Below, piece by piece: positions 4,066-63,745 of a stretch of DNA of 64,000 nt. The DNA lies in NCBI RefSeq assembly GCF_006345805.1, contig NC_043008.1, positions 63,736,001 through 63,800,000 on the forward strand. Reading direction: 5' to 3'. How positions within the stretch are numbered: the stretch's first letter is position 1; the number at the start of each line of letters is the position of its first letter. The position numbers and the translations under genes are program-made. This stretch comes from Octopus sinensis (Eukaryota). The notes under the pieces were generated by a model. It had not been told where the DNA came from and did not search any database. It saw only the letters and a program-made list of their open reading frames with translations.

Positions 4066-4443
4066 GTATCTTAACTACAATTTCCATTTGTGTATATATA
4101 AATGTCTAACAATGGCTATTTGAGCAATGAGTCAGTGGTTGCTTTGCAGTTTGGATATGACACTGATGAAGGAGCAAGAACTCCTGAAGTATGGCATATA
4201 CGCCCATTAACCATTTTGAATCTTCAATCTCATTGATGTTTAGATTAGGCATACTCAGATATGAAACATTGTAGCAAATCAGTGCTGGCTGTAATTTCTG
4301 TGGAAAATCTGTAGACATAATCTTAACAAAAGAAATATATACATTGTTTTTCACCCACATTATCAACAAAAAAAATTTCTCAGTGTTGATTTATATACAC
4401 ATTTACAAATATAAATGCATGTTATTAATCAACACTTGAATAT

Positions 4444-8339: not shown

Positions 8340-8520
8340 AGGCACAGTTGCAGCTGTGTGGTAAGAAGTTTGGTTCTCAACCTCATGGTTCCAGGTTCAG
8401 TTCAACTTCATGGCATAGTGTTCTTCTACTAGAGCCATGGGTATTATACTACAACCTTGTAAGTGGATTTGTTAGACAGAAACTGAATGAAGATATATGT
8501 ATACATGCTTGTGTGTAAGT
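8340..8520 (+). mobile_element. Family C SINE-like element, 5' half
   Basis: gctgtgtggtaagaagtttggttctcaacc...ggttccaggttcagtt...ttctactagagcc...aagtggattt...gaaactgaa matches 26480-26640. Confidence 0.75.
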
Positions 8521-8525
8521 GTGTG

Positions 8526-8577
<52 letters not shown>

Positions 8578-9144: not shown

Positions 9145-9213
<69 letters not shown>

Positions 9214-9224
9214 ATAGGTGCCTG

Positions 9225-9368
9225 TCAGTTTCCATATCAAACTATTCCCAAGGCTTTAGCCAGCCAAAGGGTATAGTTGAAAACACTGGCCCAAGTTGCT
9301 AGGTGGTTAGACTGAACCCAATGCCATATGGTTAGGAAACAAACTTCTAACTCACACAGCCACACCTA
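9225..9368 (-). mobile_element. Family C 5' half, degenerate
   Basis: Reverse-complement match to the family C head (cagtttcc...caaggcttt...cacacagccacacct). Confidence 0.65.
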
Positions 9369-12527: not shown

Positions 12528-12761
12528 CTCTCTCTTTTACTCTTTAACTTGTTTCAGTCATTTGACTGTGGCCATGCTGAACCACTGCCTGTAGTCGAGC
12601 ATATCGACCCCAGGACTTATTCTTTGTAAGCCAAGTATTTATTCTATTGGTCTCTTTTGCCGAACTGCTAAGTTACGGGAACGTAAACACACCAGCATCG
12701 GTTGTCAAGCGATGTTGGTAGAGGGACAAACACAGACACACAAACATACACATACACATTG

Positions 12762-12814
<53 letters not shown>

Positions 12815-12982
12815 TGCAACGGGCTTCTTTCAGTTTCCGTCTACCAAATCCACTCACAAGGCTTTGGTCAGCCCAAGGCTATAGTAGAAGACACTTGCCC
12901 AAGGTGCCACGCAGTGGGACTGAACCCGGAACAATGTCGTTCATAAGCAAGCTACTTACCACACAGCCACTCCTATGCCTAT
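12528..12982 (-). mobile_element. Family C composite SINE-like element, full length
   Basis: Reverse complement of 26480-26880: tRNA-like head, internal (CA)/(TA) microsatellite, second module ending CAGTCAAATGACTGAAACAAGT. Confidence 0.9.
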
Positions 12983-14119: not shown

Positions 14120-14345
14120 TGGTATAGCTGTGGCATCACGGCTAAGTTTGCTCCCCAACCATGTCAGTTCTAGTTCAGTCCCACTGTGTGGCATTTTGGG
14201 CATTTCATACTACAGCCATAGTGTGGTAAATTCATTGAGATTGAATTTGGTGGATAGAAACTGAAAGAAGCCTGTTGTTTTGTATATACATGCATACTTA
14301 TATACATGCATGCATACATATGGAAATAGAAACATACTACATATG
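14120..14345 (+). mobile_element. Degenerate family C head fragments
   Basis: ccaaccatgtcagttctagttcagtcccactgtgtggcattttgggc...gaaactgaaagaagcc. Confidence 0.65.
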
Positions 14346-20654: not shown

Positions 20655-21040
20655 ATATATATTCTATTACTTGTTTCAATCATTTGACTGTGGCCATGCT
20701 GGAGCACCGCCTTTAGTTGAGTAAATCGACTCCCCAGGACTTATTCTTTGTAAGCCTAGTATTTATTCTATCAGGCTCTTTTGGCGAACTGCTAAGTTAT
20801 GGGGATGTGACCACACCTGCATCGGTTGTCAAGCGATGCTGGGGGGGGGACAAACACAGACACACACACACACTCACATATACACATATATTTCAGTTTC
20901 CGTCTACCAAATCCACTCACAAGGCTTTGGTCAGCCCGAGACTACAATAGAAGACACTTGCCCAAGGTGTCACACTGTGGGATTGAACCCAGAACCATGT
21001 AGTTGGTAAGCAAGCTACTTAACACACAGCCACCCCTGCC
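20655..21040 (-). mobile_element. Family C composite SINE-like element
   Basis: Colinear with 12528-12982. Confidence 0.9.
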
Positions 21041-21260
21041 CCTATATATATATATATATATCCTATCTCTCTCTGTCTCTCTCTTTCCTGCCCTTACTTC
21101 CTGCTGTATATTTAAAGTAACTTCACATCATAAGGAGATAGATCTACCTTATCCTATCCTCTTTGCATTTCTACAATTTATTTCAACCATTTTCCAAACT
21201 AGCAGATTTCAGATAAATATAAAGAATTCAGCCATTTTACTAGAATAAGAATGCAAATTT

Positions 21261-24484: not shown

Positions 24485-24990
24485 CAGGGTCCATAAGTTA
24501 TTTGTGGACAGATTTATATTTATCAAAAAACAGATAATAACTTTATTTGTCAAAAATTGCTCTGAGGATAAAAACAAACTTTTTCTATAATGTTATTCAA
24601 TAAAGCCACCTTCACCTTCAACAACTGCTTCTATATGAGATCTAAATCCTCTTCACTTGAATCAAGTGGTCCTGATTCATTTCAGACATTACACTGACTA
24701 TGGTAGCTTTCAAAGAATCTTTGGTGTTATGGGCATGTTCATTGATCTCTCCCTCAACAACGTTCCAAATGTTATTGTCCAATGGATTGAGATCTGGGGA
24801 ATTAGGAGGCCAAATGTTAGGGGTTATATGATCATGAAAATTTTCAGTCACCCATTTCTGTGTTACTAGAGCCATGTGTGACAGTGCAGAGTCTTACTGA
24901 AACATATATGACATTCCATTGCATACACTGTCTATCCAAGACTTAACAATTATTTCTAGGACCTAAATGTAGGTGGCAGAGTTAACTCTA
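24485..24990 (-). pseudogene. Tc1/mariner transposase 3' remnant with right TIR
   Basis: WPPNSPDLNPLDNNIWNVVEGEINEHAHNTKDSLKATIVSVM...GFRSHIEAVVEGEGGFIE; terminus TA-CAGGGT at 24483-24490. Confidence 0.85.
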
Positions 24991-26354: not shown

Positions 26355-27210
26355 AGACATGGCTGTGTGGTTAAGAGGTTTATGTCACAACTACATGGTT
26401 TTTGGTTCAGTCCTTGGAATGTGTCTTCTATTATAGTCATGGACAAACCTATGCTTTGTGGACGAATTTGGTAAGCAGGTGTAGGAGTGACTGTGTGGTA
26501 AGTAGCTTGCTTACAAACCACATGGTTCCAGGTTCAGTCCCACTGCCTGGCACCTTGGGCAAGTGTCTTCTACTATAGCCTCGGGCCGACCAAAGCCTTG
26601 TGAGTGGATTTGGTAGATGGAAACTGAAAGAAACCTGTCGTATATATATGTGTGTGTGTGTGTGTGTTGTGTGTCTGTGTTTGTTCCCCAAACATCGCTT
26701 GACAACCGATGCTGGTGTGTTTACATCCCCATAACTTAGCGGTTCAGCAAAAGAGACCAATAGAATAAGTACTAAGCTTACAAAGAATAAGTCCTGGGGG
26801 CGATTTGCTCGACTAAAAGTGGTACTCCAGCATGGCTACAGTCAAATGACTGAAACAAGTAAAAGAGTAAAAGAGTAAGTATAATTTATGTAGAATTCTC
26901 TTGTATGCTAATGTGTGTGAGTGTGCAAGTGTGAGTGTATGTGTTTATATTTGTACGTATGTGTATGTGCATGTGTGAGTATTTGTGTTTGTGTTTATGC
27001 CCATCCTTACCCATTACTTGGCAACTGATGTCAATTTGTTTCTTGTAGCAAAGTGGAGTTCATCAAATAAAATAGTAAAACAAGTCCCAGGTTTAAAGAA
27101 TAAGTCCTGGGATGAATTTGATCATCTGACCCTACAAGGCAGTGCTCCAGCAAAGCCACAGTACAACGAGTAAAACAAGTTAAAGAGTAAAGAATAAAAA
27201 AGATAAAAAT
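26355..27210 (+). mobile_element. Family C cluster: partial head, full copy (26480-26880), degenerate 3' module (26990-27210)
   Basis: The central copy is the reverse complement of 12528-12982. Confidence 0.85.
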
Positions 27211-32254: not shown

Positions 32255-32520
32255 GTATATATATATGAGTGTATCTGTTTGTGTATGTGTGTGTATATGT
32301 TTGTGTGCCCGTGATTGTCCCTCCCCCAACATCACTTGACAACCAATGTTGTTACATTTATATCCCTGTAACTTAGTGGTTCTGCAAAAGAGACTGATAA
32401 AATAAGTACTAGGCTTACAAAGAATAAGTCCTGGGGTCGATTTGTTCAACTAAAGGTGGTGCTCCAGCATGGCCACAGTCAAGTGACTGAAACAAATAAA
32501 AGAAAATAAAAAGAAACATA
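32255..32520 (+). mobile_element. Family C 3' module
   Basis: cacttgacaaccaatgttg...gaataagtactaggcttacaaagaataagtcctggggtcgatttg...cagtcaagtgactgaaacaa. Confidence 0.85.
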
Positions 32521-34374: not shown

Positions 34375-35649
34375 TCAGGTTGGTGTGAAAGTAATGTCTG
34401 ATCTAAAGATCTAAGGTAAAAATGATTAAGCTAATGACTATGGAAATATTTATTCATTAACATTCTCTCCATTGCTTTCAATGACCTCCTTCCATCTTTC
34501 AACAACCTTATAAATGCCTCGCTTGTAAAATTCTGTAGGTTTAGAACCAAAATATTAATCCATCTCATTTTAAATATCTTCTCTTGTTGTTAACCTAAGT
34601 CCATCAAAATGGTTCTGTAGTCCTCGGAGCAAATGGTAATCAGAAGGAGCAAGGTCAGGAGAATATAGAGGATGAGGCAGTATTTCCTAACCAAGTTCAT
34701 CCAAGAGAGTTTTGGTCAGTCGAGCTGTGTGAGGATTGACATTATTGTGGTAGAAGATGATGCCCTTTCTGTTAACGAAGGATGCTCACTTTTGGTTCAG
34801 AGCTGTTTCAAATGACGATGTTGCTCATAGTAAAGATTAGCATTAATTGTTTGGTTGTTGTCTAACAATTCATAATGGATTACTTCTTTAATATCCCACC
34901 ATACACTCAACATGATCTTCTTTGGATGAAGTCCTGCTCTCGGTTGTTGAACTGGCCATTCTCCTCGACTGATCCAAGAATGGCGGCGTTTAACATTATG
35001 GTAAAGAATCCACTTCTCATCACCTGTAACAAACCTGTCTAAAAATGGTGATTGGAAGTGTTGTGAAAGCAATGATTGACAATAAGCAGCATGCTGTTGT
35101 TGATTCTCTGGAGACAGCTCGTGAGGGACCCATTTGCCAGCCACTGAAACCTTTCCAATGTGTTTTAGCTGGTGTACCATGGTTGTATGGGCCACGTTTA
35201 ACTGTTCTGCAAATTCCCTAGTGGTAATAGTAGGGCTCTCTGAAACAAGAGCTTCCAACATTTTGGATTTAAGCTTTTTTGGATGACCCTCTTTTGGCTC
35301 TTCTTTCAAAGTGAAATCACCACTTCGGAAACAGAAAAACCACCTCCTGCAACTTCTTTCATCACTACATCATCCCCATAAGTGCTCTGAATAGATCTTG
35401 CTGCCGCACTTGCATCAACACCTTTATGAAACTCGTAGAGTAAAACATTTCTTATGCAATCTTTAGTTGGGACAAACATGGTGGTAAAATTTTCTGAGAA
35501 TTATGGGTGGGAGTTAGATAATTTGAAAGAAAATAGTACAAATTAGACACAGAGATATCTTAAAACTATAAGAAGGGTTAAAAAATATTGATAAATTCGC
35601 TCTGAAACATTTTTTCTAGAAATCAGACATTACTTTTGTACCAACCTGA
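34375..35649 (-). mobile_element. Full-length decayed mariner transposon (~1275 bp) with TIRs; pseudo-ORF about 35479->34450
   Basis: TIRs TCAGGTTGGTGTGAAAGTAATGTCTGAT (34375-34402) and ATCAGACATTACTTTTGTACCAACCTGA (35622-35649); motifs WVPHEL, TGDEKW, HPLYSPDLAPSDY; frameshifts and stops present. Confidence 0.92.
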
Positions 35650-39729: not shown

Positions 39730-40075
39730 GTCATAGACAGCAATTTAGCTAACAGCTACACTAGTTGTTTACTGAATGGCATGAGGAACATTCTAGTGAA
39801 GTTGAACATCTTATCTGGCCAGCACAGTCCCCAGATCTTGATATTATTGAGCATTTGTGGTGCAATTTAGAAATACAAGTAAGGAGTGGACATCTTCCTC
39901 CAACATCACTACAAGAACTGGAGACTGTTTTAGCTGAAGAATGGACAATTTCCTTTGGAAACAATTCAGACTTTGTACGAGTCCATACCTCATAGAATTC
40001 AAGCTGTAATTATTGCCAAAGGTAGTCCTACCCCATATTAAAAAAATTTGTTTGAAATTTTAAGGTATTTCCACT
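39730..40075 (+). pseudogene. Tc1-like transposase 3' remnant
   Basis: EVEHLIWPAQSPDLDIIEHLWCNLE...PTSLQELETVLAEEW; shifted frame LYESIPHRIQAVIIAKGSPTPY*. Confidence 0.85.
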
Positions 40076-40410
40076 AGGACAATTACTCCCTTAGGACAAT
40101 TACCCCACTAGGACAATTACCCAACTAGGACAAATATCCCACTAGGACAATTACACCACTAGGACAATTACCCCACTAGGACAATTACACCACTAGGACA
40201 ATTACTCTCCTAGGGCAATTACCCCACTAGGACAATTACCATACTAGGACAATTACCATACTAGGACAATTACCCCACTAGGACAATTACCCCTGACGAC
40301 AATAGATGATGATTTAAAACTTCTTAATATATCAGAGAGGGGGTAATTCCTAGGGATTAGTTGTTGTTGGGGGGGATGGTCCTTGGTGGGGTAAATGTTC
40401 TAGAGTCATA
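40072..40410. repeat. About 12 tandem copies of an 18-bp unit (CTAGGACAATTACCCCA[C]) with degenerate inverted copies downstream
   Basis: Direct reading of 40072-40295; inverted motifs GGGGGTAATTCCTAGG, GGGGGGATGGTCCTTGG and TGGGGTAAATGTTCTAG at 40338-40402. Confidence 0.9.
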
Positions 40411-41479: not shown

Positions 41480-41690
41480 TAGAAGTGTGGCTGTGTGGTA
41501 AGAAGTTTGCTTCCCAGCCATATGGTTTTGGGTTCCGCCCCAATCCATGGCAGTTTGAGCAAATGTCTTCTACTATTGCACCAGGCTAACCAATTATTTG
41601 TGAATGAATTTCGTTGAAAAACATTCGTGTGTGTGTGTGAGAGAGAGAGTGTGTGTGTGTTTGTGTCTCCGTGTTTTGACATCATGTGAC
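41480..41690 (+). mobile_element. Degenerate family C head
   Basis: gtggctgtgtggtaagaagtttgcttcccagccatatggtttt...gcaaatgtcttctactat. Confidence 0.7.
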
Positions 41691-42284: not shown

Positions 42285-43635
42285 TATGTATTAGTTTTGC
42301 CGAAAAGTCCATTTCATTTACAAACAAAAATAAAAGACAAATTTTAAACACAAAGTGATTTATTCAATCAATGATATAATTCCCATTTAGTTTCACTATC
42401 TTCAACCATCTTGTGAGTAGATCCATTCTGCCTTGCTCGAAGAATTTGTTTCTACAGGTGAAAAAATCTCTTCCAGGTGAATTTTTACATCCTTTTCTGA
42501 GTTGAAGGTCTGTCCATTTAATGAATTTTGAAGAGGCTGAAACAGGTAGAAATCTGAAGGTTCTAGAAAGGGCGAATATAGGTAGGGTGCAGCAAAACTT
42601 TCCAGTCAAACCCCAGAAACTTCTGCATCTGCAAAGAAGAATGTGGCTTGGCATGGTTGTGATGAAAGCCAATGATTTTACGATTAGCAAGTACTGGGTT
42701 CTTCTAGAAGATCACTGCATTTAATTTGTCTTGCTGGTTACAGTAGACAATCAAATTGATGGTTCTATCTGTGGAAAGCAGCCCATAAAATACAATGTCC
42801 TAACAATCCCACCAAACAGAAACCAAAAATTTCTTAAGGTGAAGTCCTGCTTTGGAGGTTGTTTGTAATGGTTCACTGCACTTCCTTCATTATTGTTTGC
42901 ACGTCGCATCGTTACAAACAGTTCATTTATCATCCCCTATCACCATTTTCTTTAAAAAAAGTATTGTCTTTTTCATAATTGTACAACAAATCACAGATGG
43001 ATGAGTGTTGGATGAGGTTAACTTCATTCAATTGATAGTGGACCTAAACATCAATCTTGCTGGTATGACCAATATGATGCAGATGACTCACAATGCTCAA
43101 TTTGGATATATTGGAAGAACATCTAACATCAACCTGATAAGAATAACAGGGTTGACAACTTCTTCATTTTGTTGCTGTTAATCTCAGTTGGTTGGAGAAC
43201 ATCTAACATCAACCTGATAAGAAAAACGAGTTGATGTTGATTAACTTCTCAATTTTGTTGCTTTTAATCTCAATTGGTTGGAGAGAATGAGGACAGAAAA
43301 ATTTCCTGACTGAAACATTCAAAACCACTCCAGGTATACATTCTAGAACAGAATCTTCTTCATACACAGAACTTATTTTCCCTATAAGTTTCCACTGCTT
43401 TCTCACAAGCTTTCAAATAAAAAAGCATGTGGTTTCAATAGTGTTCGTTTTGGTTCTTCATTTCCAAGCACACAAATTGCATGTCCTGTCACAAGTTCAT
43501 GCCAAACTTTATTGAAATATTATATATCTCATGAGTGCACATGTGCAAGGAACAAACTGAAGTTAGCTACTTCATAAAGCGTTTGATGTTTAGTATTGAC
43601 AAAAACCAAATGGACTTTTGAACAATTCACTATAA
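42285..43635 (-). mobile_element. Heavily decayed mariner element (~1.35 kb)
   Basis: Manual translation SLNGQTFNSEKDVKIHLEE.../NKFFEQGRMDLLTRWLKIVKLNGNYIID*, KKFLVSVWWDC, GFHHNHAKPH; TIR remnants AAAGTCCATTT (~42304) and AAATGGACTTTT (~43607). Confidence 0.75.
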
Positions 43636-44069
43636 CATACAAAATCGCAGAGATGGTTGTATAGTTAACCACGTGGTTTCGACCTTGTGACTCCATTGCA
43701 TGGCACCTTGGGTAAGTGTCTTCTACTATATACCTAAGCCAACTAATGCCTTGTGAAGAAATTTAGTAGATGAATATTGCAAATGAATGTTGATATTTTA
43801 CATTTGTCATCATTTAAGAGAGGTGATGGTGGTGTTAACATTACTTGATAGCATTTTAAATATTCACTCTGCATATTCAAAGACCTGTAGAATAAAACAA
43901 TACTCCCTTACTTGAAAACAGATAAGAGGTAGGGACAGGAATAAAATATTACTATAAAATCCTTATTGAAATAAAATCCCATTAAAAAATCCATGCTTGC
44001 ATGACATGGAAATGAGACATTGAATGACAAAGCAATATGTATAGATATAACATGTATGAATATATTACG

Positions 44070-45672: not shown

Positions 45673-46257
45673 CATACGTACATAAACAGGCTTTTACCCA
45701 GTTTCCATCCATTAAGTTCCATTTACAGTGTAATTAGTTTAGCCAAGGTTTATAGGATACAAAGATCTTGCTCAAGCTACTGTTTGGTGATACTGAACCT
45801 GAAACCTCTAGTTGATATAACATACATAGATGTATAGAGATAGATATTCATATGATGATATAGCACACAAACATAACGACATACACATGTAATTATACTA
45901 TATAAAAATATATATTAGATGTATAAATGTAACTTATATACATATATATATATATATATGTATATATATATGACTATATATATATATATATATAGCAATT
46001 AAGGACAACTACTTAATAAGGAAAACTTAACAAGAAATTGTCAGGTAGATAGCGTAAAAACCTCATAAGAGAAAAAATTTCGAAAATAATTATTTCTTAT
46101 TGAACATATTAATTTATATATAGAGGGCATTATACATACATGCCAGGAGGCATTCTACATACACGCCATACGCTAAGAGGGACAATCAGTCATTTCTACC
46201 AGAAATATTACTAATCCCACCGAATGCAATTTTTCAAAGAAAGACATATAAAAATAT

Positions 46258-46305
46258 AGACCTGTATCACATTGATTTCATACTTACGTAATCATCAGCA
46301 GGCCT
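46258..46305 (-). ncRNA. Type I hammerhead ribozyme (left block; also 46739-46786, 47220-47267, truncated 47693-47731)
   Basis: Reverse complement = AGGCCTG CTGATGA TTACGTAAGTAT GAAA TCAATGTGA TA CAGGTCT. Confidence 0.88.
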
Positions 46306-47870
46306 GAATATACTATAAATAAACAACGACCCCGCTTCGCTTAAGCGATCAGCTACTGATCAACATCAACGAAGCACATGGGTGGGTTTATTTATACTAT
46401 ACTATATCCGGATGAATGGCAAACTTTTACGAATTGCATTTCGGGAGAGGAAAAGTTTTTTCGGAATAAAAATTTAGCAATTAAGGACAACTACTTAATA
46501 GGAAAACTAACAAGAAATTGTCAGGTAGATAGCGTAAAAACCTCATAAGAGAAAAAATTTCGAAAATAATATTTCTTATTGAACATATTAATTTATATAT
46601 AGAGGGCATTATACATACATGCCAGGAGGCATTCTACATACACGCCATACGCTAAGAGGGACAATCAGTCATTTCTACCAGAAATATTACTAATCCCACC
46701 GAATGCAATTTTTCAAAGAAAGACATATAAAAATATATAGACCTGTATCACATTGATTTCATACTTACGTAATCATCAGCAGGCCTGAATATACTATAAA
46801 TAAACAACGACCCCGCTTCGCTTAAGCCGATCAGCTAACTGATCAACATCAACGAAGCACATGGGTGGGTTTATATATACTATATCCGGATGAATGGCAA
46901 ACTTTTACGAATTGCATTTCGGGAGAGGAAAAGTTTTTTCGGAATAAAAATTTAGCAATTAAGGACAACTACTTAATAAGGAAAACTTAACAAGAAATTG
47001 TCAGGTAGATAGCGTAAAAACCTCATAAGAGAAAAAATTTCGAAAATAATTATTTCTTATTGAACATATTAATTTATATATAGAGGGCATTATACATACA
47101 TGCCAGGAGGCATTCTACATACACGCCATACGCTAAGAGGGACAATCAGTCATTTCTACCAGAAATATTACTAATCCCACCGAATGCAATTTTTCAAAGA
47201 AAGACATATAAAAATATATAGACCTGTATCACATTGATTTCATACTTACGTAATCATCAGCAGGCCTGAATATACTATAAATAAACAACGACCCCGCTTC
47301 GCTTAAGCCGATCAGCTAACTGATCAACATCAACGAAGCACATGGATGGGTTTATATACTATATCCGGATGAATGGCAAACTTTTACGAATTGCATTTCG
47401 GGAGAGGAAAAGTTTTTTCGGAATAAAAATTTAGCAATTAAGGACAACTACTTAATAAGGAAAACTTAACAAGAAATTGTCAGGTAGATAGCGTAAAAAC
47501 CTCATAGAGAAAAAATTTCGAAAATAATTATTCTTATTGAACATATTAATATATATAGAGGGCATATACATACATGCCAGGAGGCATTCTACATACACGC
47601 CATACGCTAAGAGGGACAATCAGTCATTTCTACCAGAAAATTACTAATCCCACCGAATGCAATTTTTCAAAGAAAGACATATAAAAATATATAGACCTGT
47701 ATCACATTGATTTCATACTTACGTAATCATCCTCTCCCGAAATGCAATTCGTAAAAGTTTGCCATTCATCCGGATATAGTATATATAAACCCACCATGTG
47801 CTTCGTTGATGTTGATCAGTTAGCTGATCGGCTAAGCGAAGCGGGGTCGTTGTTTATTTATAGTATATTC

Positions 47871-47918
47871 AGGCCTGCTGATGATTACGTAAGTATGAAA
47901 TCAATGTGATACAGGTCT
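47871..47918 (+). ncRNA. Type I hammerhead ribozyme (first of 16 in the right block)
   Basis: Stem I AGGCCUG/CAGGUCU; core CUGAUGA 47878-47884; stem II UAC-GUAA-GUA closed by U.U; GAAA 47897-47900; stem III AUCA/UGAU; AUA triplet with predicted cleavage after 47911. Confidence 0.88.
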
Positions 47919-50900
47919 ATATATTTTTATATGTGTCTTTCTTTGAAAAATTGCATTCGGTGGGATTAGTAATATTTCTGGTAGAAATGACTGATTGTCC
48001 CTCTTAGCGTATGGCGTGTATGTAGAATGCCTCCTGGCATGTATGTATAATGCCCTCTATATAGAAATTAATATGTTCAATAAGAAATAATTATTTTCGA
48101 AATTTTTTCTCTTATGAGGTTTTTACGCTATCTACCTGACAATTTCTTGTTAAGTTTTCCTTATTAAGTAGTTGTCCTTAATTGCTAAATTTTTATTCCG
48201 AAAAAACTTTTCCTCTCCCGAAATGCAATTCGTAAAAGTTTGCCATTCATCCGGATATAGTATATATAAACCCACCCATGTGCTTCGTTGATGTTGATCA
48301 GTTAGCTGATCGGCTTAAGCGAAGCGGGGTCGTTGTTTATTTAGTATATTCGGCCTGCTGATGATTACGTAAGTATGAAATCAATGTGATACAGGTCTAT
48401 ATATTTTTATATGTCTTTCTTTGAAAAATTGCATTCGGTGGGATTAGTAATATTTCTGGTAGAAATGACTGATTGTCCCTCTTAGCGTATGGCGTGTATG
48501 TAGAATGCCTCCTGGCATGTATGTATAATGCCCTCTATATATAAATTAATATGTTCAATAAGAAATAATTATTTTCGAAATTTTTTCTCTTATGAGGTTT
48601 TTACGCTATCTACCTGACAATTTCTTGTTAAGTTGTCCTTAATTGCTAAATTTTTATTCCGAAAAAACTTTTCCTCTCCCGAAATGCAATTCGTAAAAGT
48701 TTGCCATTCATCCGGATATAGTATATATAAACCCACCCATGTGCTTCGTTGATGTTGATCAGTTAGCTGATCGGCTTAAGCGAAGCGGGGTCGTTGTTTA
48801 TTTATAGTATATTCAGGCCTGCTGATGATTACGTAAGTATGAAATCAATGTGATACAGGTCTATATATTTTTATATGTCTTTCTTTGAAAAATTGCATTC
48901 GGTGGGATTAGTAATATTTCTGGTAGAAATGACTGATTGTCCTCTTAGCGTATGGCGTGTATGTAGAATGCCTCCTGGCATGTATGTATAATGCCCTCTA
49001 TATATAAATTAATATGTTCAATAAGAAATAATTATTTTCGAAATTTTTTTCTCTTATGAGGTTTTTACGCTATCTACCTGACAATTTCTTGTTAAGTTTT
49101 CCTTATTAAGTAGTTGTCCTTAATTGCTAAATTTTTATTCCGAAAAAACTTTTCCTCTCCCGAAATGCAATTCGTAAAAGTTTGCCATTCATCCGGATAT
49201 AGTATATATAAACCCACCCATGTGCTTCGTTGATGTTGATCAGTTAGCTGATCGGCTTAAGCGAAGCGGGGTCGTTGTTTATTTATAGTATATTCAGGCC
49301 TGCTGATGATTACGTAAGTATGAAATCAATGTGATACAGGTCTATATATTTTTATATGTCTTTCTTTGAAAAATTACATTCGGTGGGATTAGTAATATTT
49401 CTGGTAGAAGAAATGACTGATTGTCCCTCTTAGCGTATGGCGTGTATGTAGAATGCCTCCTGGCATGTATGTATAATGCCCTCTATATATAAATTAATAT
49501 GTTCAATAAGAAATAATTATTTTCGAAATTTTTTCTCTATGGGTTTTTACGCTATCTACCTGACAATTTCTTGTTAAGTTTTCCTATTAAGTAGTTGTCC
49601 TTAATTGCTAATTTTTATTCCGAAAAAACTTTTCCTCTCCCGAAATGCAATTCGTAAAAGTTTGCCATTCATCCGGATATAGTATATATAAACCCACCCA
49701 TGTCTTCGTTGATGTTGATCAGTTAGCTGATCGGCTTAGCGAAGCGGGGTCGTTGTTTATTTATAGTATATTCAGGCCTGCTGATGATTACGTAAGTATG
49801 AATCAATGTGATACAGGTCTATATATGTTTATATGTCTTTCTTTGAAAAATTGCATTCGGGGGGATTAGTACTATTTCTGGTAGAATGACTGATTGTCCC
49901 TCTTAGCGTATGGCGTGTATGTAGAATGCCTCCTGGCTGTATGTATAATGCCCTCTATATATAAATTAATATGTTCAATAAGAAATAATTATTTTCGAAA
50001 TTTTTTCTCTTATGAGGTTTTTACCGCTATCTACCTGACAATTTCTTGTTAAGTTTTCCTTATTAAGTAGTTGTCCTTAATTGCTAAATTTTTATTCCGA
50101 AAAAACTTTTCCTCTCCCGAAATGCAATTCGTAAAAGTTTGCCATTCATCCGGATATAGTATATATAAACCCACCCATGTGCTTCGTTGATGTTGATCAG
50201 TTAGCTGATCGGCTTAAGCGAAGCGGAGTCGTTGTTTATTTATAGTATATTCAGGCCTGCTGATGATTACGTAAGTATGAAATCAATGTGATACAGGTCT
50301 ATATATTTTTATATGTCTTTCTTTGAAAAATTGCATTCGGTGGGATTAGTAATATTTCTGGTAGAAATGACTGATTGTCCCTCTTAGCGTATGGCGTGTA
50401 TGTAGAATGCCTCCTGGCATGTATGTAAATGCCCTCTATATATAAATTAATATGTTCAATAAGAAATAATTATTTTCGAAATTTTTTCTCTTATGAGGTT
50501 TTTACGCTATCTACCTGACAATTTCTTGTTAAGTTTTCCTTATTAAGTAGTTGTCCTTAATTGCTAAATTTTTATTCCGAAAAAACTTTTCCTCTCCCGA
50601 AATGCAATTCGTAAAAGTTTGCCATTCATCCGGATATAGTATATATAACCCACCCATGTGCTTCGTTGATGTTGATCAGTTAGCTGATCGCTTAAGCGAA
50701 GCGGGGTCGTTGTTTATTTATAGTATATTCAGGCCTGCTGATGATTACGTAAGTATGAAATCACTGTGATACAGGTCTATATATTTTTATATGTCTTTCT
50801 TTGAAAAATTGCATTCGGTGGGATTAGTAATATTTCTGGTAGAAATGACTGATTGTCCCTCTTAGCGTATGGCGTGTATGTAGAATGCCTCCTGGCATGT

Positions 50901-53900
50901 ATGTATAATGCCCTCTATTATAAATTAATATGTTCAATAAGAAATATTATTTCGAAATTTTTTCTCTTATGAGGTTTTTACGCTATCTACCTGACAATTT
51001 CTTGTTAAGTTTTCCTTATTAAGTAGTTGTCCTTAATTGCTAAATTTTTATTCTTCCGAAAAAACTTTTCCTCTCCCGAAATGCAATTCGTAAAAGTTTG
51101 CCATTCATCCGGATATAGTATATATAAACCCACCCATGTGCTTCGTTGATGTTGATCAGTTAGCTGATCGGCTTAAGCGAAGCGGGTCGTTGTTTATTTA
51201 TAGTATATTCAGGCCTGCTGATGATTACGTAAGTATGAAATCAATGTGATACAGGTCTATATATTTTTATATGTCTTTCTTTGAAAAATTGCATTCGGTG
51301 GGATTAGTAATATTTTGGTAGAAATGACTGATTGTCCCTCTTAGCGTATGGCGTGTATGTAGAATGCCTCCTGGCATGTATGTATAATGCCCTCTTATAT
51401 AAAATTAATATGTTCAATAAGAAATAATTATTTTCGAAATTTTTTCTCTCTTATGAGGTTTTTACGCTATCTACCTGACAATTTCTTGTTAAGTTTTCCT
51501 TATTAAGTAGTTGTCCTTAATTGCTAAATTTTTATTCCGAAAAAACTTTTCCTCTCCCGAAATGCAATTCGTAAAAGTTTGCCATTCATCCGGATATAGT
51601 ATATATAAACCCACCCATGTGCTTCGTTGATGTTGATCAGTTAGCTGATCGGCTTAAGCGAAGCGGGGTCGTTGTTTATTATAGTATATTCAGGCCTGCT
51701 GATGATTACGTAAGTATGAATCAATGTGATACAGGTCTATATATTTTTATGTCTTTCTTTGAAAAATTGCATTCGGTGGGATTAGTAATATTTCTGGTAG
51801 AAATGACTGATTGTCCCTCTTAGCGTATGGCGTGTATGTAGAATGCCTCCTGGCATGTATGTATAATGCCCTCTATATATAATTAATATGTTCAATAAGA
51901 AATAATTATTTTCGAAATTTTTTCTCTTATGAGGTTTTTACGCTATCTACCTGACAATTTCTTGTTAAGTTTTCCTTATTAAGTAGTTGTCCTTAATTGC
52001 TAAATTTTTATTCCGAAAAAACTTTTCCTCTCCCGAAATGCAATTCGTAAAAGTTTGCCATTCATCCGGATATAGTATATATAAACCCACCCATGTGCTT
52101 CGTTGATGTTGATCAGTTAGCTGATCGGCTTAAGCGAAGCGGGGTCGTTGTTTATTTATAGTATATTCAGGCCTGCTGATGATTACGTAAGTATGAAATC
52201 ACTGTGATACAGGTCTATATATTTTTATATGTCTTTCTTTGAAAAATTGCATTCGGTGGGATTAGTAATATTCTGGTAGAAATGACTGATTGTCCCTCTT
52301 AGCGTATGGCGTGTATGTAGAATGCCTCCTGGCATGTATGTATAATGCCCTCTATATATAAATTAATATGTTCAATAAGAAATAATTATTTTCGAAATTT
52401 TTTCTCTATGAGGTTTTTACGCTATCTACCTGACAATTTCTTGTTAAGTTTTCCTTATTAAGTAGTTGTCCTTAATTGCTAAATTTTTATTCCGAAAAAA
52501 CTTTTCCTCTCCCGAAATGCAATTCGTAAAAGTTTGCCATTCATCCGGATATAGTATATATAAACCCACCCATGTGCTTCGTTGATGTTGATCAGTTAGC
52601 TGATCGGCTTAAGCGAAGCGGGGTCGTTGTTTATTTATAGTATATTCAGGCCTGCTGATGATTACGTAAGTATGAATCAATGTGATACAGGTCTATATAT
52701 TTTTATATGTCTTTCTTTGAAAAATTGCATTCGGTGGATTAGTAATATTTCTGGTAGAAATGACTGATTGTCCCTCTTAGCGTATGGCGTGTATGTAGAA
52801 TGCCTCCTGGCATGTATGTATAATGCCCTCTATATATAAATTAATATGTTCAATAAGAAAAATATTATTTTCGAAATTTTTTCTCTTATGAGGTTTTTAC
52901 GCTATCTACCTGACAATTTCTTGTTAAGTTTTCCTTATTAAGTAGTTGTCCTTAATTGCTAAATTTTTATTCCGAAAAAACTTTTCCTCTCCCGAAATGC
53001 AATTCGTAAAAGTTTGCCATTCATCCGGATATAGTATATATAAACCCACCATGTGCTTCGTTGATGTTGATCAGTTAGCTGATCGGCTTAAGCGAAGCGG
53101 GGTCGTTGTTTATTTATAGTATATTCAGGCCTGCTGATGATTACGTAAGTATGAAATCAATGTGATACAGGTCTATATATTTTTATGTCTTTCTTTGAAA
53201 AATTGCATTCGTGGGATTAGTAATATTTCTTGGTAGAAATGACTGATTGTCCCTCTTAGCGTATGGCGTGTATGTAGAATGCCTCCTGGCATGTATGTAT
53301 AATGCCCTCTATATATAAATTAATATGTTCAATAAGAAATAATTATTTTCGAATTTTTTTCTCTTATGAGGTTTTTACGCTATCTACCTGACAATTTCTT
53401 GTTAAGTTTTCCTTATTAAGTAGTTGTCCTTAATTGCTAAATTTTTATTCCGAAAAAACTTTTCCTCTCCCGAAATGCAATTCGTAAAAGTTTGCCATTC
53501 ATCCGGATATAGTATATATAAACCCACCCATGTGCTTCGTTGATGTTGATCAGTTAGCTGATCGGCTTAAGCGAAGCGGGGTCGTTGTTTATTTATAGTA
53601 TATTCAGGCCTGCTGATGATTACGTAAGTATGAAATCAATGTGATACAGGTCTATATATTTTTATATGTCTTTCTGGTAGAAATGACTGATTGTCCCTCT
53701 TAGCGTATGGCGTGTATGTAGAATGCCTCCTGGCATGTATGTATAATGCCCTCTATATATAATTAATATGTTCAATAAGAATAATTATTTTCGAAATTTT
53801 TTTCTCTATGAGGTTTTTACGCTATCTATACCTGACAATTTCTTGTAAGTTTTCCTTATTAAGTAGTTGTCCTTAATTGCTAAATTTTTATTCCGAAAAA

Positions 53901-55205
53901 ACTTTTTCTCTCCCGAAATGCAATTCGTAAAAGTTTGCCATTCATCCGGATATAGTATATATAAACCCACCCATGTGCTTCGTTGATGTTGATCAGTTAG
54001 CTGATCGGCTTAGCGAAGCGGGGTCGTTGTTTATTTATAGTATATTCAGGCTGCTGATGATTACGTAAGTATGAAATCAATGTGATACAGGTCTATATAT
54101 TTTTATATGTCTTTCTTTGAAAAATGCATTCGGTGGGATTAGTAATATTTCTGGTAGAAATGACTGATTGTCCCTCTAGCGTATGGCGTGTATGTAGAAT
54201 GCCTCCTGGCATGTATGTATAATGCCCTCTATATATAAATTAATATGTTCAATAAGAAATAATTATTTTCGAAATTTTTTCTCTTATGAGGTTTTTACGC
54301 TATCTACCTGACAATTTCTTGTTAAGTTTTCCTTATTAAGTAGTTGTCCTTAATTGCTAAATTTTTATTCCGAAAAAACTTTTCCTCTCCCGAATGCAAT
54401 TCGTAAAAGTTTGCCATTCATCCGGATATAGTATATAATAAACCCACCCATGTGCTTCGTTGATGTTGATCAGTTAGCTGATCGGCTTAAGCGAAGCGGG
54501 GTCGTTGTTTATTATAGTATATTCAGGCTCAGCCTGCTGATGATTACGTAAGTATGAAATCAATGTGATACAGGTCTATATATTTTTATATGTCTTTCTT
54601 TGAAAAATTGCATTCGGTGGGATTAGTAATATTTCTGGTAGAAATGACTGATTGTCCCTCTTAGCGTATGGCGTGTATGTAGAATGCCTCCTGGCATGTA
54701 TGTATAATGCCCTCTATATATAAATTAATATGTTCAATAAGAAATAATTATTTTCGAAATTTTTTCTCTTATGAGGTTTTTACGCTATCTACCTGACAAT
54801 TTCTTGTTAAGTTTTCCTTATTAAGTAGTTGTCCTTAATTGCTAAATTTTTATTCCGAAAAAACTTTTCCTCTCCCGAAATGCAATTCGTAAAAGTTTGC
54901 CATTCATCCGGATATAGTATATATAAACCCACCCATGTGCTTCGTTGATGTTGATCAGTTAGCTGATCGGCTTAAGCGAAGCGGGGTCGTTGTTTATTTA
55001 TAGTATATTCAGGCCTGCTGATGATTACGTAAGTATGAAATCAATGTGATACAGGTCTATATATTTTTATATGTCTTTCTTTGAAAAATTGCATTCGGTG
55101 GGATTAGTAATATTTCTGGTAGAAATGACTGATTGTCCCTCTTAGCGTATGGCGTGTATGTAGAATGCCTCCTGGCATGTATGTATAATGCCCTCTATAT
55201 ATAAA

Positions 55206-55238
<33 letters not shown>

Positions 55239-55275
55239 TAAATATATATATATATACACATATATATATATATAT

Positions 55276-55308
<33 letters not shown>

Positions 55309-55352
55309 TATATCATGAATAAGATATAAAGCTTTCCATTCAGATAACTGTG

Positions 55353-59934: not shown

Positions 59935-60325
59935 AGCATAGGTGTAAGAGGGGTTGTGTGTTAAGAAGCTTGCTTACTAGCCACATGGTACCAGTTTCAG
60001 TCCCACTGCATGGCACTTTGGGCCACTATCTTCTACTATATTCTTGGGCCAGCCAAAGCCTTGTGAGTGGATTTGGTAGACGGAAACTGAAAGAATCCCA
60101 TCGTATATATGCGTGTGTGTGTGTGTTTGTCCCCACCTCCCACTATTGCTTGACAAATGATTTTGGTGTATTTACATCCCTGTAACTTGGCGGTTCAGGA
60201 AAGGAGACTGATAGAATAAGTACTGTGCTTACAAAGAACAAGTCCTAGGTATGATTTGTTCAACTGAAGTTGGTACTCCAGCATAGCTGCAGTCAAATGA
60301 CTGAGACAAGTAAAAGAATAAAAGA

Positions 60326-61530: not shown

Positions 61531-61689
61531 GAGCATAGGTGTAGCTATGCAATACAAAACTTGCTTCCTAACCAAATGGTTCCAGGGTAAGTCACACTAC
61601 ATGGCACTTGGGTAAGTGCCTTTTGCCAACCAAAGCCTTGTTAGTGGAGTTGAAAGATGGAAACTGAAAGAACTCCATTGTATATACAT

Positions 61690-61733
<44 letters not shown>

Positions 61734-61995
61734 ATGCATATAAATGTATTATAATTATGGGGATATGTGTGTGTGTGTGTGTGTCTGTGTTTGTACCCCA
61801 TCACCACTAGACAATTAGTGATGGTGTGTTTATATCCCTGTACCTTAAAGGATCAGCCAAGAGGCCGGTAGAATAAGCACTGGGCTTCAAAAACAATAAG
61901 TACTGGGGTTGATTTATTCGACTAAAAATTTTTCATAGTGGTGCCCCAGCATGGCCACAGTCTAATGACTGAAACAGTTAAAAGAAAAATAAAAG
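61530..61995 (+). mobile_element. Family C composite SINE-like element (diverged)
   Basis: Colinear with 26480-26880. Confidence 0.85.
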
Positions 61996-63005: not shown

Positions 63006-63745
63006 TGCCGATTCTGTAACGATGAGGTTGAAACAATAGATCACCTAATCTCAGGGTGTAGAGTCTTAGCACCTGCAGAATTTAAAGCAAGACGTGACAG
63101 AGTCGACCAGTATTTACATTGGACAATATGTCGGCATTATAAAATCAAAACCACTGACAAATGGTATAAACATCATCCTGAAGCTGTGACTGAGGGAGAA
63201 AATGTGTCGATTCTATGGGACTTCCCCGTACAGACCGACAGGACTATAAAAGCTAATAAACTGGATATTATTATAAAAGATCAGACAAAAAGGACGTGTT
63301 TATTAATTGACATGAGTATTCCCTGTGATCACAATATGGCAGCAAAAGAATTTGACAAGATTAGTAAATATAAAGACCTGCTAATAGAAACTGAAAAAAT
63401 GTGGTATCTCAAGGTGACTACAGTACCAGTGATTGTAGGATCTCTAAGAATGATAAAAAAATGGTACTGAAACCTATTTGAAAATGATTTCAGGCTTACC
63501 ATCCCTACAGGAAATGCAAAAAGTCGTATTAACTGGAACGGCTCATGTACTGAGAAGAGCACTATGGCTGTGAAAATAACATCCATCCATGAATTTATTT
63601 AGTTATTAATTTTTAAATACATATTTCATCTTTGAATTTGCGCGTGTAATCTGGAAATGCATACAATGCCCTTCTCTGCCCTAGGTGTATGGAAAACACT
63701 CGGCGAGAAACGGAAGAAAATTTGAAGAAAGAAGGAAAAAACATG
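63006..63745 (+). pseudogene. Dong/R4-clade non-LTR retrotransposon 3' end: CCHC knuckle, restriction-like endonuclease and 3' UTR
   Basis: In frame from 63006: CRFCNDEVETIDHLISGCRVLAPAEFKARRDRV...ILWDFPVQTDRTIKANKLDIII.D...LLIDMSIP...KISKYKDL...VPVIVGSL; after a frameshift QKVVLTGTAHVLRRALWL*; flanked by (AAT)n on both sides. Confidence 0.9.

What the first reader, a model, noticed from the sequence alone, without database searches (positions are those of the whole stretch)
45995..55202. 9.2-kb tandem array in which every ~480-bp unit carries a type I hammerhead ribozyme (candidate retrozyme / ribozyme satellite)
Seen: each unit contains AGGCCTG-CTGATGA-TTACGTAAGTAT-GAAA-TCAATGTGA-TA-CAGGTCT. 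It folds into a 7-bp stem I (extendable via GTATAT/ATATAT past a UC bulge), the exact CUGAUGA and GAAA core, a 3-bp stem II with a GUAA (GNRA) loop, a short stem III and an AUA cleavage triplet. There are 16 copies on + and 3 complete plus 1 truncated on -. The unit has no credible ORF. Established: type I hammerheads in tandem non-coding repeats are known from newt satellite 2, Schistosoma Sm-alpha, Dolichopoda pDo500, metazoan non-LTR retrozymes and Penelope-like element pseudo-LTRs, where multimeric transcripts self-cleave to monomers that can circularise. Inference: this is such a family, transcribed and cut into ~480-nt monomer or circular RNAs. I do not recognise the family and it may be undescribed in this lineage.
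Basis: partly seen in the sequence, partly recalled or inferred. Interest (0 to 1): 0.95.

Follow-up and report, generated by a model that had tools for sequence, protein, structure and literature searches.

The report
Hammerhead-ribozyme tandem repeat (animal retrozyme)
A 9.2-kb block of about 19 copies of a 480-bp non-coding repeat, each carrying a small self-cutting RNA motif (a type I hammerhead ribozyme), is a new example, probably from an octopus-like genome, of an already known class of animal mobile repeats called non-LTR retrozymes.

Summary
A ~481-bp unit is repeated 15.7 times on + (47730-55213) and 3.6 times on - (45993-47731). The hammerhead string occurs 16 times on +, 3 times complete on - and once truncated on -, against 0 expected by chance.

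The motif meets the field's own criteria (CUGANGA / GAAAY / RUH) and has three helices in type I order. Nothing as good appeared in 46 Mb of composition-matched random sequence.

Rfam's hammerhead models do not detect it. I attribute this to poor sensitivity. The unusual helix II (a U10.1·U11.1 mismatch, a UAC/GUA stem and a tetraloop) occurs at 40 sites in 38 viral contigs. All 40 are complete hammerheads with strong covariation, and Rfam failed on every one I tested.

The same mismatch is documented in active natural hammerheads, including an axolotl retrozyme.

The array meets published operational definitions of a non-LTR retrozyme. Four of the 16 + copies are mutated.

New here: the two sub-arrays lie head to head, with their 3' ends outward against (TA)n tracts. 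This resembles Penelope-like-element insertion.

Verdict: a new member of a known kind. Cleavage and expression are untested.

The parts
47730..55213 (+). Main sub-array: 15.7 head-to-tail units of about 479-481 bp. It starts at unit position about 298-300 (numbered from the cleavage site) and ends at unit position about 157-161.
   Evidence: TRF; unit extraction and alignment; boundary mapping.
45993..47731 (-). Inverted sub-array: 3.6 units on the minus strand. It is 5'-truncated at the junction (unit position 450, inside the CUGAUGA box). Its 3' end lies at unit position about 283, at the left edge.
   Evidence: TRF.
48815..48862 (+). Representative intact type I hammerhead. Parts: helix I 5' strand AGGCCUG; core CUGAUGA; helix II U·U plus UAC/GUA with a GUAA loop; GAA; helix III AUCA/UGAU with an AUG loop; A17 at 48855; cleavage between 48855 and 48856; helix I 3' strand CAGGUCU. 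The other + copies have C3 at 47878, 48358, 49303, 50260, 50738, 51218, 52176, 53134, 53613, 54537 and 55018. The defective + copies are 49781, 51699 and 52655 (one A of GAAA lost) and 54054 (C lost in helix I).
   Evidence: HHR structure energy -8.3 and MFE -10.3 kcal/mol.
47220..47267 (-). Intact hammerhead on the minus strand (C3 at 47260, cleavage after 47227). Two more have C3 at 46779 and 46298.
47700..47731 (-). Truncated hammerhead of the fourth minus copy. It retains GAUGA...AUA but lacks C3, U4 and the helix I 5' strand.
47730..47731 (.). Head-to-head junction of the two sub-arrays, where the 5' ends meet. The dinucleotide TC is shared by both arms (2-nt microhomology). The junction is not a symmetric palindrome: unit position 450 meets unit position 298-300.
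   Evidence: Direct reading.
45894..45994 (.). Imperfect (TA)n microsatellite abutting the 3' end of the minus sub-array.
   Evidence: TRF; flank sequence.
55196..55313 (.). Imperfect (TA)n microsatellite abutting the 3' end of the plus sub-array. It merges with the unit's own TATATATA tract.
   Evidence: TRF.

Best explanation
The array is a metazoan non-LTR retrozyme, meaning a hammerhead-bearing satellite. It is probably in an octopod cephalopod genome.

Each ~481-bp non-coding unit encodes a type I hammerhead on one strand. A read-through transcript of two or more units would fold each hammerhead: helix I of 7 bp, helix II of U·U plus 3 bp with a GUAA loop, and helix III of 4 bp. It would cut after A17 of the AUA triplet. 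That releases ~464-481-nt monomers with 5'-OH and 2',3'-cyclic phosphate ends. The monomers are highly self-paired, helix I brings the two ends together, and a tRNA ligase of the RtcB type could then circularise them.

Helix III is weak, so cleavage may be more efficient as a double hammerhead formed between neighbouring units, as in newt and axolotl.

I further infer, with less confidence, that this locus arose by reverse transcription of such RNA into a (TA)n microsatellite by Penelope-like-element machinery, primed from both sides of the break. That would explain two multimeric cDNAs lying head to head with their 3' ends outward.

Shown: the repeat, the motif, its statistical non-randomness, its match to published criteria, the natural recurrence of its helix II, the self-pairing, and the array architecture. 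Inferred: transcription, cleavage, circularisation and the insertion mechanism.
For: Array and copy number.

Complete core and three helices: 15 intact copies. In 46 Mb of matched background there were 0 equally good motifs and 11 lenient ones.

Field criteria: CUGANGA/GAAAY/RUH are met as CUGAUGA/GAAAU/AUA.

Precedent for the mismatch: the validated axolotl Ax353 hammerhead also has the U·U mismatch, a 3-bp helix II and A17. It cleaved 22% in one hour as a monomer and efficiently as a dimer. Perreault et al. 2011 describe U10.1-U11.1 as a natural variant and the most active mispair.

Natural recurrence of helix II: all 40 sites in 38 viral contigs with CUGAUGA-UUAC-N4-GUAU-GAAA are complete hammerheads (38 by descriptor, 2 by eye). 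In 19 distinct type III sequences, helices I and III are 99-100% paired, 10 of the 12 pairs change on both sides, 0 of 500 shuffles reach the observed values, and slid controls pair at 31-46%.

Operational retrozyme definition: met.

Composition and folding: GC is 33%. The circular monomer MFE is -123.3 kcal/mol (z = -5.5) with 64% of bases paired, similar to the mussel retrozyme. Helices I and II appear in the MFE of the whole monomer.

No ORF.

Architecture: 3' ends outward on (TA)n, 5' ends joined with 2-nt microhomology. This matches the PLE hallmarks of partial tandems, an inverted 5'-truncated copy at the 5' end, and (TA)n target bias.

Age: variants are mostly private, 114 of 139 variable columns.
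Against: Rfam 15 hammerhead models give no hit at gathering thresholds, at E<=10 on the array, or on 101 nt alone.

A covariance model built from four validated retrozyme hammerheads scores the copies only 12.5-14.3 bits (E about 0.1-0.3). An unrelated look-alike at 4157-4197 scores 13.8 bits.

Helix III is not stable on its own (0 kcal/mol, pair probability 0.02 or less), and helix II has pair probability of only about 0.24 in the ensemble.

Four of the 16 + copies carry disabling indels, and the hammerhead is not visibly less variable than the rest of the unit.

The antisense strand is also more structured than its shuffles (z = -4.1), so the self-pairing is not strand-specific.

No second locus, other species or RNA evidence could be obtained. 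No PLE gene was found in the window, though only some ORFs were scanned.

(TA)n covers 3-5% of the rest of the window, so TA flanks alone are only about p = 0.05 evidence.
Confidence: 0.8

Rival explanations
1. This is an ordinary satellite DNA amplified purely at the DNA level by unequal crossing-over or replication slippage. The hammerhead is an inherited relic that is no longer transcribed or active, and the inversion is a later rearrangement.
For: Four of the 16 + copies carry disabling indels, and the motif shows no excess conservation within the array. Helices II and III are weak. No dispersed copies exist elsewhere in the window. No expression data are available.
Against: Fifteen copies keep every invariant core base and all three helices. 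Copies are 94-98% identical with mostly private variants and no higher-order repeat pattern. Both outward ends sit on (TA)n, and the inner ends join 5' to 5', which DNA-level amplification does not predict. This rival also overlaps with the main explanation, because known retrozymes are themselves satellites.
Confidence: 0.13
2. The repeat is not a separate non-autonomous family. It is an amplified pseudo-LTR or terminal region of an autonomous Penelope-like element, whose pLTRs normally carry type I hammerheads.
For: PLE pLTRs carry hammerheads and form tandem and inverted structures at (TA)n sites. Li et al. 2026 find retrozymes to be sister to PLE pLTRs.
Against: There are about 19 units with no RT or GIY-YIG coding sequence inside or beside them. 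Published PLE hammerheads are mostly 'minimal' variants, whereas this one has full helices.
Confidence: 0.05
3. The hammerhead-like string is a chance match in an AT-rich satellite.
For: Rfam models are silent. The small CM gives only a marginal E-value, and a chance look-alike exists at 4157-4197.
Against: 46 Mb of matched random sequence yielded 0 equally good motifs. The helix II string is 100% predictive of full hammerheads in an independent collection. The look-alike at 4157 lacks A15.1 and helix III.
Confidence: 0.02
4. The motif is a C/D-box snoRNA-like kink-turn (UGAUGA as C box, GUGA as D box, with a terminal stem) and not a ribozyme.
For: Weak Rfam hits to C/D snoRNA families on the 101-nt segment.
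Against: Scores are 10-16 bits against family cut-offs of 40-70. The D box is GUGA, not CUGA. The boxes lie only about 30 nt apart, leaving no room for guide regions. The same noise hits appear on a phage hammerhead.
Confidence: 0.005

Closest known systems
Metazoan non-LTR retrozymes (Cervera & de la Pena 2020, PMC7229834; Li, Clavereau & Pollet 2026, bioRxiv 10.64898/2026.07.22.740005)
   Same: [quoted passage not shown] Each unit carries a type I hammerhead, lacks LTR, PBS and PPT elements, and gives a highly self-paired monomer. The unit length is within the published 51-972 bp range.
   Different: No sequence similarity to the coral, mussel or axolotl retrozymes. The 481-bp unit is longer than the 170-400 nt circRNAs shown experimentally. 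No RNA data exist. The likely host lineage (octopod) has no retrozyme description in the held literature.
Axolotl HHR_Amex2 / retrozyme Rtz_353
   Same: Both have a U·U mismatch at the base of helix II, a 3-bp helix II, A17 at the cleavage site, and a weak helix III that favours action as a dimer.
   Different: Here loop 2 is a GUAA tetraloop where the axolotl has a 5-nt loop. Helix III is 4 bp with a 3-nt non-palindromic loop where the axolotl has 2 bp with a palindromic tetraloop. The helix sequences and the rest of the unit are unrelated.
Classical hammerhead satellites: newt satellite 2, Schistosoma Sm-alpha, Dolichopoda pDo500
   Same: All are tandem genomic repeats whose transcripts self-cleave to monomers through a type I hammerhead. 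pDo500 has a similar unit size of about 500 bp (from my own knowledge and the citation seen).
   Different: Sequence relatedness could not be tested, because the pDo500 paper is not held. The mariner relic points to a different phylum.
Phage hammerheads with the helix II module U-UAC-N4-GUA-U (IMG/VR loci L003-L040)
   Same: The core plus helix II string, CUGAUGA-UUAC-tetraloop-GUAU-GAAA, is identical. An AUA or GUA cleavage triplet is common in both.
   Different: 38 of the 40 phage sites are type III (helix III open), single-copy, and sit just upstream of a ribosome-binding site and start codon in viral DNA. The resemblance is probably convergence on a short module and does not indicate common descent.
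Penelope-like element insertions (Craig et al. 2021, PMC8557442)
   Same: Both show head-to-tail multimers, an inverted 5'-truncated copy at the 5' end, and insertion into (TA)n.
   Different: There is no RT or GIY-YIG ORF here, and the unit is 481 bp where a PLE is 3-4 kb.

Membership tests
Hammerhead ribozyme, type I | Invariant catalytic core C3 U4 G5 A6 N7 G8 A9 / G12 A13 A14 / A15.1-U16.1 / H17 (the field rule CUGANGA / GAAAY / RUH) | tested here: met
   The sequence reads CUGAUGA / GAAAU / AUA in 15 complete copies. The rule is quoted.
Hammerhead ribozyme, type I | Three helices around the core, with helix I open and helices II and III closed by loops | tested here: met
   Helix I is 7 bp (plus 6 bp beyond a UC bulge). 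Helix II is U·U plus 3 bp with a GUAA loop. Helix III is 4 bp with an AUG loop. The U10.1·U11.1 mismatch is a documented active natural variant and recurs in 40 of 40 viral hammerheads.
Hammerhead ribozyme, type I | Match to curated covariance models (Rfam Hammerhead_1 and its relatives) | tested here: not met
   No hit at gathering thresholds or at E<=10. The models also miss covariation-supported phage hammerheads with the same helix II, so this is a limit of the models' sensitivity. A CM built from 4 validated retrozyme hammerheads gives 12.5-14.3 bits, which is marginal.
Hammerhead ribozyme, type I | Loop 1 / loop 2 tertiary contacts | not testable with these tools
   A UC bulge 7 bp from the core and a GNRA loop 2 are present. 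The canonical contact nucleotides cannot be assessed, and the mussel retrozyme hammerheads also lack them.
Hammerhead ribozyme, type I | Site-specific self-cleavage | not testable with these tools
   This needs an in vitro transcription assay.
Metazoan non-LTR retrozyme | Tandem repeat with a complete type I hammerhead in at least 2 consecutive units and an HHR MFE below -5 kcal/mol | tested here: met
   TRF arrays. Four consecutive intact units begin at 47878. The HHR MFE is -10.3 kcal/mol.
Metazoan non-LTR retrozyme | Non-coding, no LTR/PBS/PPT, GC below 50% | tested here: met
   No ORF homologue or Pfam family. Head-to-tail units without terminal repeats. GC is 0.33.
Metazoan non-LTR retrozyme | Highly self-paired monomer or circular RNA | tested here: met
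   The linear monomer folds at -130.3 kcal/mol (z = -5.96). The circular form folds at -123.3 kcal/mol (z = -5.5) with 64% of bases paired. Validated retrozymes are comparable. The antisense strand is also structured (z = -4.1).
Metazoan non-LTR retrozyme | Expressed as unit-length linear and circular RNA | not testable with these tools
   No transcriptome data are available.
Metazoan non-LTR retrozyme | Multiple genomic loci, and co-occurrence with Penelope-like elements | not testable with these tools
   There is only one locus in the window, and no eukaryotic genome collection could be searched. The literature reports PLEs and Rfam Hammerhead_1 hits in cephalopods.
Penelope-like element (autonomous) | An ORF with RT and GIY-YIG endonuclease between pseudo-LTRs | tested here: not met
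   No such ORF lies in or near the array. Only 18 ORFs were scanned with Pfam.
C/D-box snoRNA | C box RUGAUGA and D box CUGA with a terminal stem, at snoRNA-like spacing and scoring above the family cut-off | tested here: not met
   10-16 bits against cut-offs of 40-70.

The most novel reading that the evidence does not exclude
This may be the first characterised retrozyme family of a cephalopod, built around a variant hammerhead (a U10.1·U11.1 mismatch and a GNRA-capped 3-bp helix II, a module otherwise seen in a phage hammerhead class). The locus may also preserve the footprint of its own birth: two multimeric cDNAs, copied by rolling-circle reverse transcription of a circular RNA, primed from both sides of one break in a (TA)n microsatellite and joined 5' to 5'. 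That would be direct structural evidence that retrozymes are integrated by Penelope-type target-primed reverse transcription. So far this is supported mainly by co-occurrence and phylogeny.
Probability: 0.3. Interest if true: 0.55.

Novelty: new member of a known kind. Interest (0 to 1): 0.4.

Why it matters
Hammerhead-bearing tandem repeats are an established and widespread class of animal mobile elements that produce abundant small circular RNAs. Another family adds taxonomic breadth but no new principle.

Two points have some value beyond cataloguing. First, curated covariance models (Rfam 15) miss this hammerhead and a whole covariation-supported class of phage hammerheads that share its helix II. 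Annotation pipelines that rely on Rfam therefore undercount such ribozymes. Second, the head-to-head, 3'-ends-outward, (TA)n-flanked architecture is a testable clue to how retrozymes integrate, which is still unresolved.

Tried and rejected
(1) Rfam 15 at gathering thresholds on the whole window, at E<=10 on the array, and on 101 nt alone found no hammerhead. I do not take this as evidence of absence, because Rfam also fails on covariation-supported phage hammerheads.

(2) A covariance model from four validated retrozyme hammerheads (A1/R1) ranks the copies at the top of the window. The E-value is only 0.1-0.3 and a noise hit scores equally, so the model is too small to discriminate.

(3) A conservation test within the array has no power. 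Copies are 94-98% identical and differ mostly by indels.

(4) I searched for other copies through a spurious ORF in 5.8 billion proteins, two JGI metagenome scans, the rest of the window and sequence strings in the literature. All were negative. No eukaryotic genome collection was available.

(5) Strand-specific folding initially looked informative (-123 against -93 kcal/mol). Against its own shuffles the antisense is also structured (z = -4.1), so I dropped that argument.

(6) The C/D-box snoRNA reading was rejected on scores and geometry.

(7) A missed-adapter fold-back artefact was rejected for the inversion, because the junction is not symmetric: unit position 450 meets unit position 298-300. 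Other misassembly is not excluded.

(8) Identifying the organism from the RT tail was inconclusive: 67% best identity, with hits in Clytia and Octopus. The mariner relic gave a clearer signal towards Octopus.

(9) The pDo500 paper could not be read.

Full report

Yes. Tandem Repeats Finder reports two abutting arrays. One spans 45993-47731 (period 481, 3.6 copies, 98% matches). The other spans 47730-55213 (period 479, 15.7 copies, 94% matches).

The hammerhead string occurs 16 times on +, 3 times complete on - and once truncated on -, with none expected from shuffles. I cut the array at the predicted cleavage site (...GUGAUA|CAGGUCU). This gives 18 full units of 441-483 bp, most of them 477-481 bp, and a 481-nt consensus.

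Copies differ mainly by small indels: 137 indel cells against 31 substitutions. Three + copies have lost one A of GAAA, and one has lost a C in helix I. Twelve of the 16 + copies and all three complete - copies are therefore intact.

The longest open frames are 72-85 aa. They have no homologue among 5.8 billion proteins and no Pfam family.

**2. Is the motif a hammerhead or a chance match?**

Read directly, the motif has every invariant base:
- C3 U4 G5 A6 U7 G8 A9.
- G12 A13 A14.
- The A15.1-U16.1 pair.
- A17 as the cleavage nucleotide.
- C1.1-G2.1 closing a 7-bp helix I, extendable by 6 bp beyond a UC bulge.

Helix II is a U10.1·U11.1 mismatch followed by UAC/GUA and a GUAA loop. Helix III is AUCA/UGAU with a 3-nt loop. 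The connectivity is type I.

A descriptor encoding these rules finds the 15 intact copies and nothing else in the window. In 46 Mb of order-1 Markov sequence with the window's composition, it finds no equally good motif and 11 lenient ones. That corresponds to fewer than about 2e-5 strict, or about 2e-4 lenient, per 481-bp unit on both strands.

The motif also meets the rule used by the laboratory that defined metazoan retrozymes: a perfect helix topology plus CUGANGA / GAAAY / RUH.

**3. The Rfam problem**

No Rfam 15 hammerhead family matches at gathering thresholds, at E<=10 on the array, or on 101 nt alone. The only hits are noise-level C/D-box snoRNA matches, caused by the UGAUGA string.

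I built a covariance model from four experimentally validated retrozyme hammerheads (coral, mussel and two axolotl, taken from the supplement). It ranks the copies at the top of the window, but with only 12.5-14.3 bits (E about 0.1-0.3). A look-alike at 4157-4197 that lacks A15.1 and helix III scores 13.8 bits. Covariance models therefore neither confirm nor exclude this motif.

The explanation came from a scan of viral contigs with the helix II module left free in its loop (CTGATGATTACNNNNGTATGAAA). It found 40 sites in 38 contigs. Every one is a complete hammerhead. Thirty-eight are type III by descriptor. The other two (L003 and L019) are type I by eye.

In 19 distinct type III sequences:
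- Helices I and III are 99-100% paired.
- Ten of the 12 pairs change on both sides.
- None of 500 shuffles reach the observed pairing or covariation score.
- Structures slid by 1-3 columns pair at only 31-46%.

Rfam misses these as well. The candidate's unusual helix II is thus an evolutionarily maintained ribozyme module, and the Rfam negative reflects a limit of sensitivity.

The literature agrees. Perreault et al. 2011 report natural hammerheads whose stem II begins with U10.1-U11.1, and note that this mispair supports more cleavage than any other. The axolotl retrozyme hammerhead HHR_Amex2 has the same U·U, a 3-bp helix II and A17. It cleaves 22% in one hour as a monomer and efficiently as a dimer.

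**4. What is the repeat?**

It fits the published descriptions of metazoan non-LTR retrozymes. [quoted passage not shown] They have low GC, no LTR/PBS/PPT or ORF, and they produce highly self-paired circular RNAs.

It also meets the operational definition of Li et al. 2026: a TRF array, a hammerhead in the unit, an HHR MFE below -5 kcal/mol, and at least 2 consecutive intact units. Their family consensus lengths run from 51 to 972 bp. Here the HHR MFE is -10.3 kcal/mol.

The monomer folds at -130.3 kcal/mol (z = -5.96), and helices I and II are present in the global minimum. As a circle it folds at -123.3 kcal/mol (z = -5.5) with 64% of bases paired. Energy per nucleotide and GC content are close to those of the validated mussel retrozyme.

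The antisense strand is also more structured than its own shuffles (z = -4.1). The self-complementarity is therefore consistent with a retrozyme but is not strand-specific evidence.

There is no sequence similarity to the four published retrozymes. This is expected, because such families are species-specific.

**5. How it most likely works**

Inferred from the known class: a transcript spanning two or more units folds the hammerheads and cuts after A17. This releases ~464-481-nt monomers. Their ends are held together by helix I, and a tRNA ligase of the RtcB type can circularise them.

Helix III alone is not stable (0 kcal/mol), whereas two copies can form a -6.3 kcal/mol intermolecular helix III. 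A double-hammerhead mode between neighbouring units, as in newts and axolotl, is therefore plausible.

The unit contains several T5-T6 runs on the sense strand (direct reading). These argue against RNA polymerase III read-through. This last point is inference.

**6. Architecture of the locus (new here)**

In unit coordinates counted from the cleavage site:
- The - sub-array runs from unit position 450 at the junction to about position 283 at the left edge (about 45994).
- The + sub-array runs from about position 298-300 at the junction to about position 157-161 at the right edge.

Both 3' ends thus face outward and abut imperfect (TA)n tracts (45894-45994 and 55196-55313). The two 5' ends meet at 47730/47731, sharing a TC dinucleotide. 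The junction cuts through the CUGAUGA box of the fourth - copy. It is not a symmetric palindrome, which argues against a simple fold-back sequencing artefact.

This geometry matches the hallmarks described for Penelope-like-element insertions. Those are partial tandems or multicopy head-to-tail arrays, an inverted 5'-truncated copy at the 5' end, and a preference for (TA)n targets. Retrozymes have been proposed to be non-autonomous PLE derivatives.

Variation among copies is mostly private (114 of 139 variable columns) and shows no higher-order pattern. That is compatible with near-simultaneous generation of the copies.

I regard a twin-primed, rolling-circle reverse-transcription origin as a reasonable inference, with probability about 0.3-0.4. 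(TA)n covers 3-5% of the rest of the window, so the flanks alone are weak evidence. No PLE gene was found in the window, and misassembly cannot be excluded.

**7. Host lineage**

The window is eukaryotic: 33.7% GC, rich in microsatellites, and without long ORFs.

A mariner relic at 34800-35369 (-) is 76-87% identical to copies annotated in Octopus sinensis, O. bimaculoides and O. vulgaris. All other hits fall to about 60% or below. A non-LTR RT tail at 63006-63467 also hits O. sinensis, but at no higher identity than many unnamed marine contigs.

An octopod cephalopod is therefore likely but not proven.

The held literature has no description of cephalopod retrozymes. It does report 235 Rfam Hammerhead_1 hits and Penelope elements in the giant squid genome, and PLE remnants in Octopus.

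**8. Verdict**

The thing is a new member of a well-known kind, so interest is moderate. Catalysis, expression and the insertion mechanism remain to be tested.

Noticed in passing
IMG/VR loci L003-L040 (for example L007:2539-2600 minus strand; L005:380-440): A class of phage-borne hammerheads shares the string CUGAUGA-UUAC-N4-GUAU-GAAA. 38 are type III and 2 are type I (L003, L019). Loop 1 carries a conserved UGUGU, and most lie a few tens of nt upstream of a ribosome-binding site and ATG. Helices I and III covary strongly, yet Rfam 15 reports no hammerhead for them, either at gathering thresholds or at E<=10.
   Followed up: partly
window 4157-4197 (+): A hammerhead look-alike: ACA-CUGAUGA-AGGAG...CUCCU-GAAG. 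It scores 13.8 bits with the small CM but lacks A15.1 and any helix III. It is single-copy and judged to be chance.
   Followed up: yes
window 26452-26835, 12572-12975, 20694-21043, 59940-60284, 32282-32472, 61560-61927, 9203-9368, 8354-8526, 41487-41617, 43693-43772, 14173-14278: A dispersed interspersed repeat of about 350-400 bp with at least 11 copies at 72-83% identity. Copies often lie next to CA/TA microsatellites. It is probably a SINE-like element and was not classified.
   Followed up: partly
window 34800-35369 (-), 42367-42711 (-), 24645-24893 (-), 39765-39992 (+), 63006-63467 (+): Transposon relics. These are a mariner transposase fragment (Pfam Transposase_1, closest to Octopus copies), a probable mariner C-terminus, two Tc1-like DDE_3 fragments, and the C-terminal tail of a non-LTR reverse-transcriptase ORF.
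   Followed up: partly
window 40071-40293 and 43111-43284: A 17-bp minisatellite (13 copies, consensus CCACTAGGACAATTACC) and an 86-bp repeat (2.1 copies) lie upstream of the array. Their nature is unknown.
   Followed up: no
window 49781, 51699, 52655 (+): The same one-base loss in the GAAA box occurs in three non-adjacent units. Together with the excess of homopolymer indels across the array, this could reflect long-read consensus errors and not real mutations.
   Followed up: no
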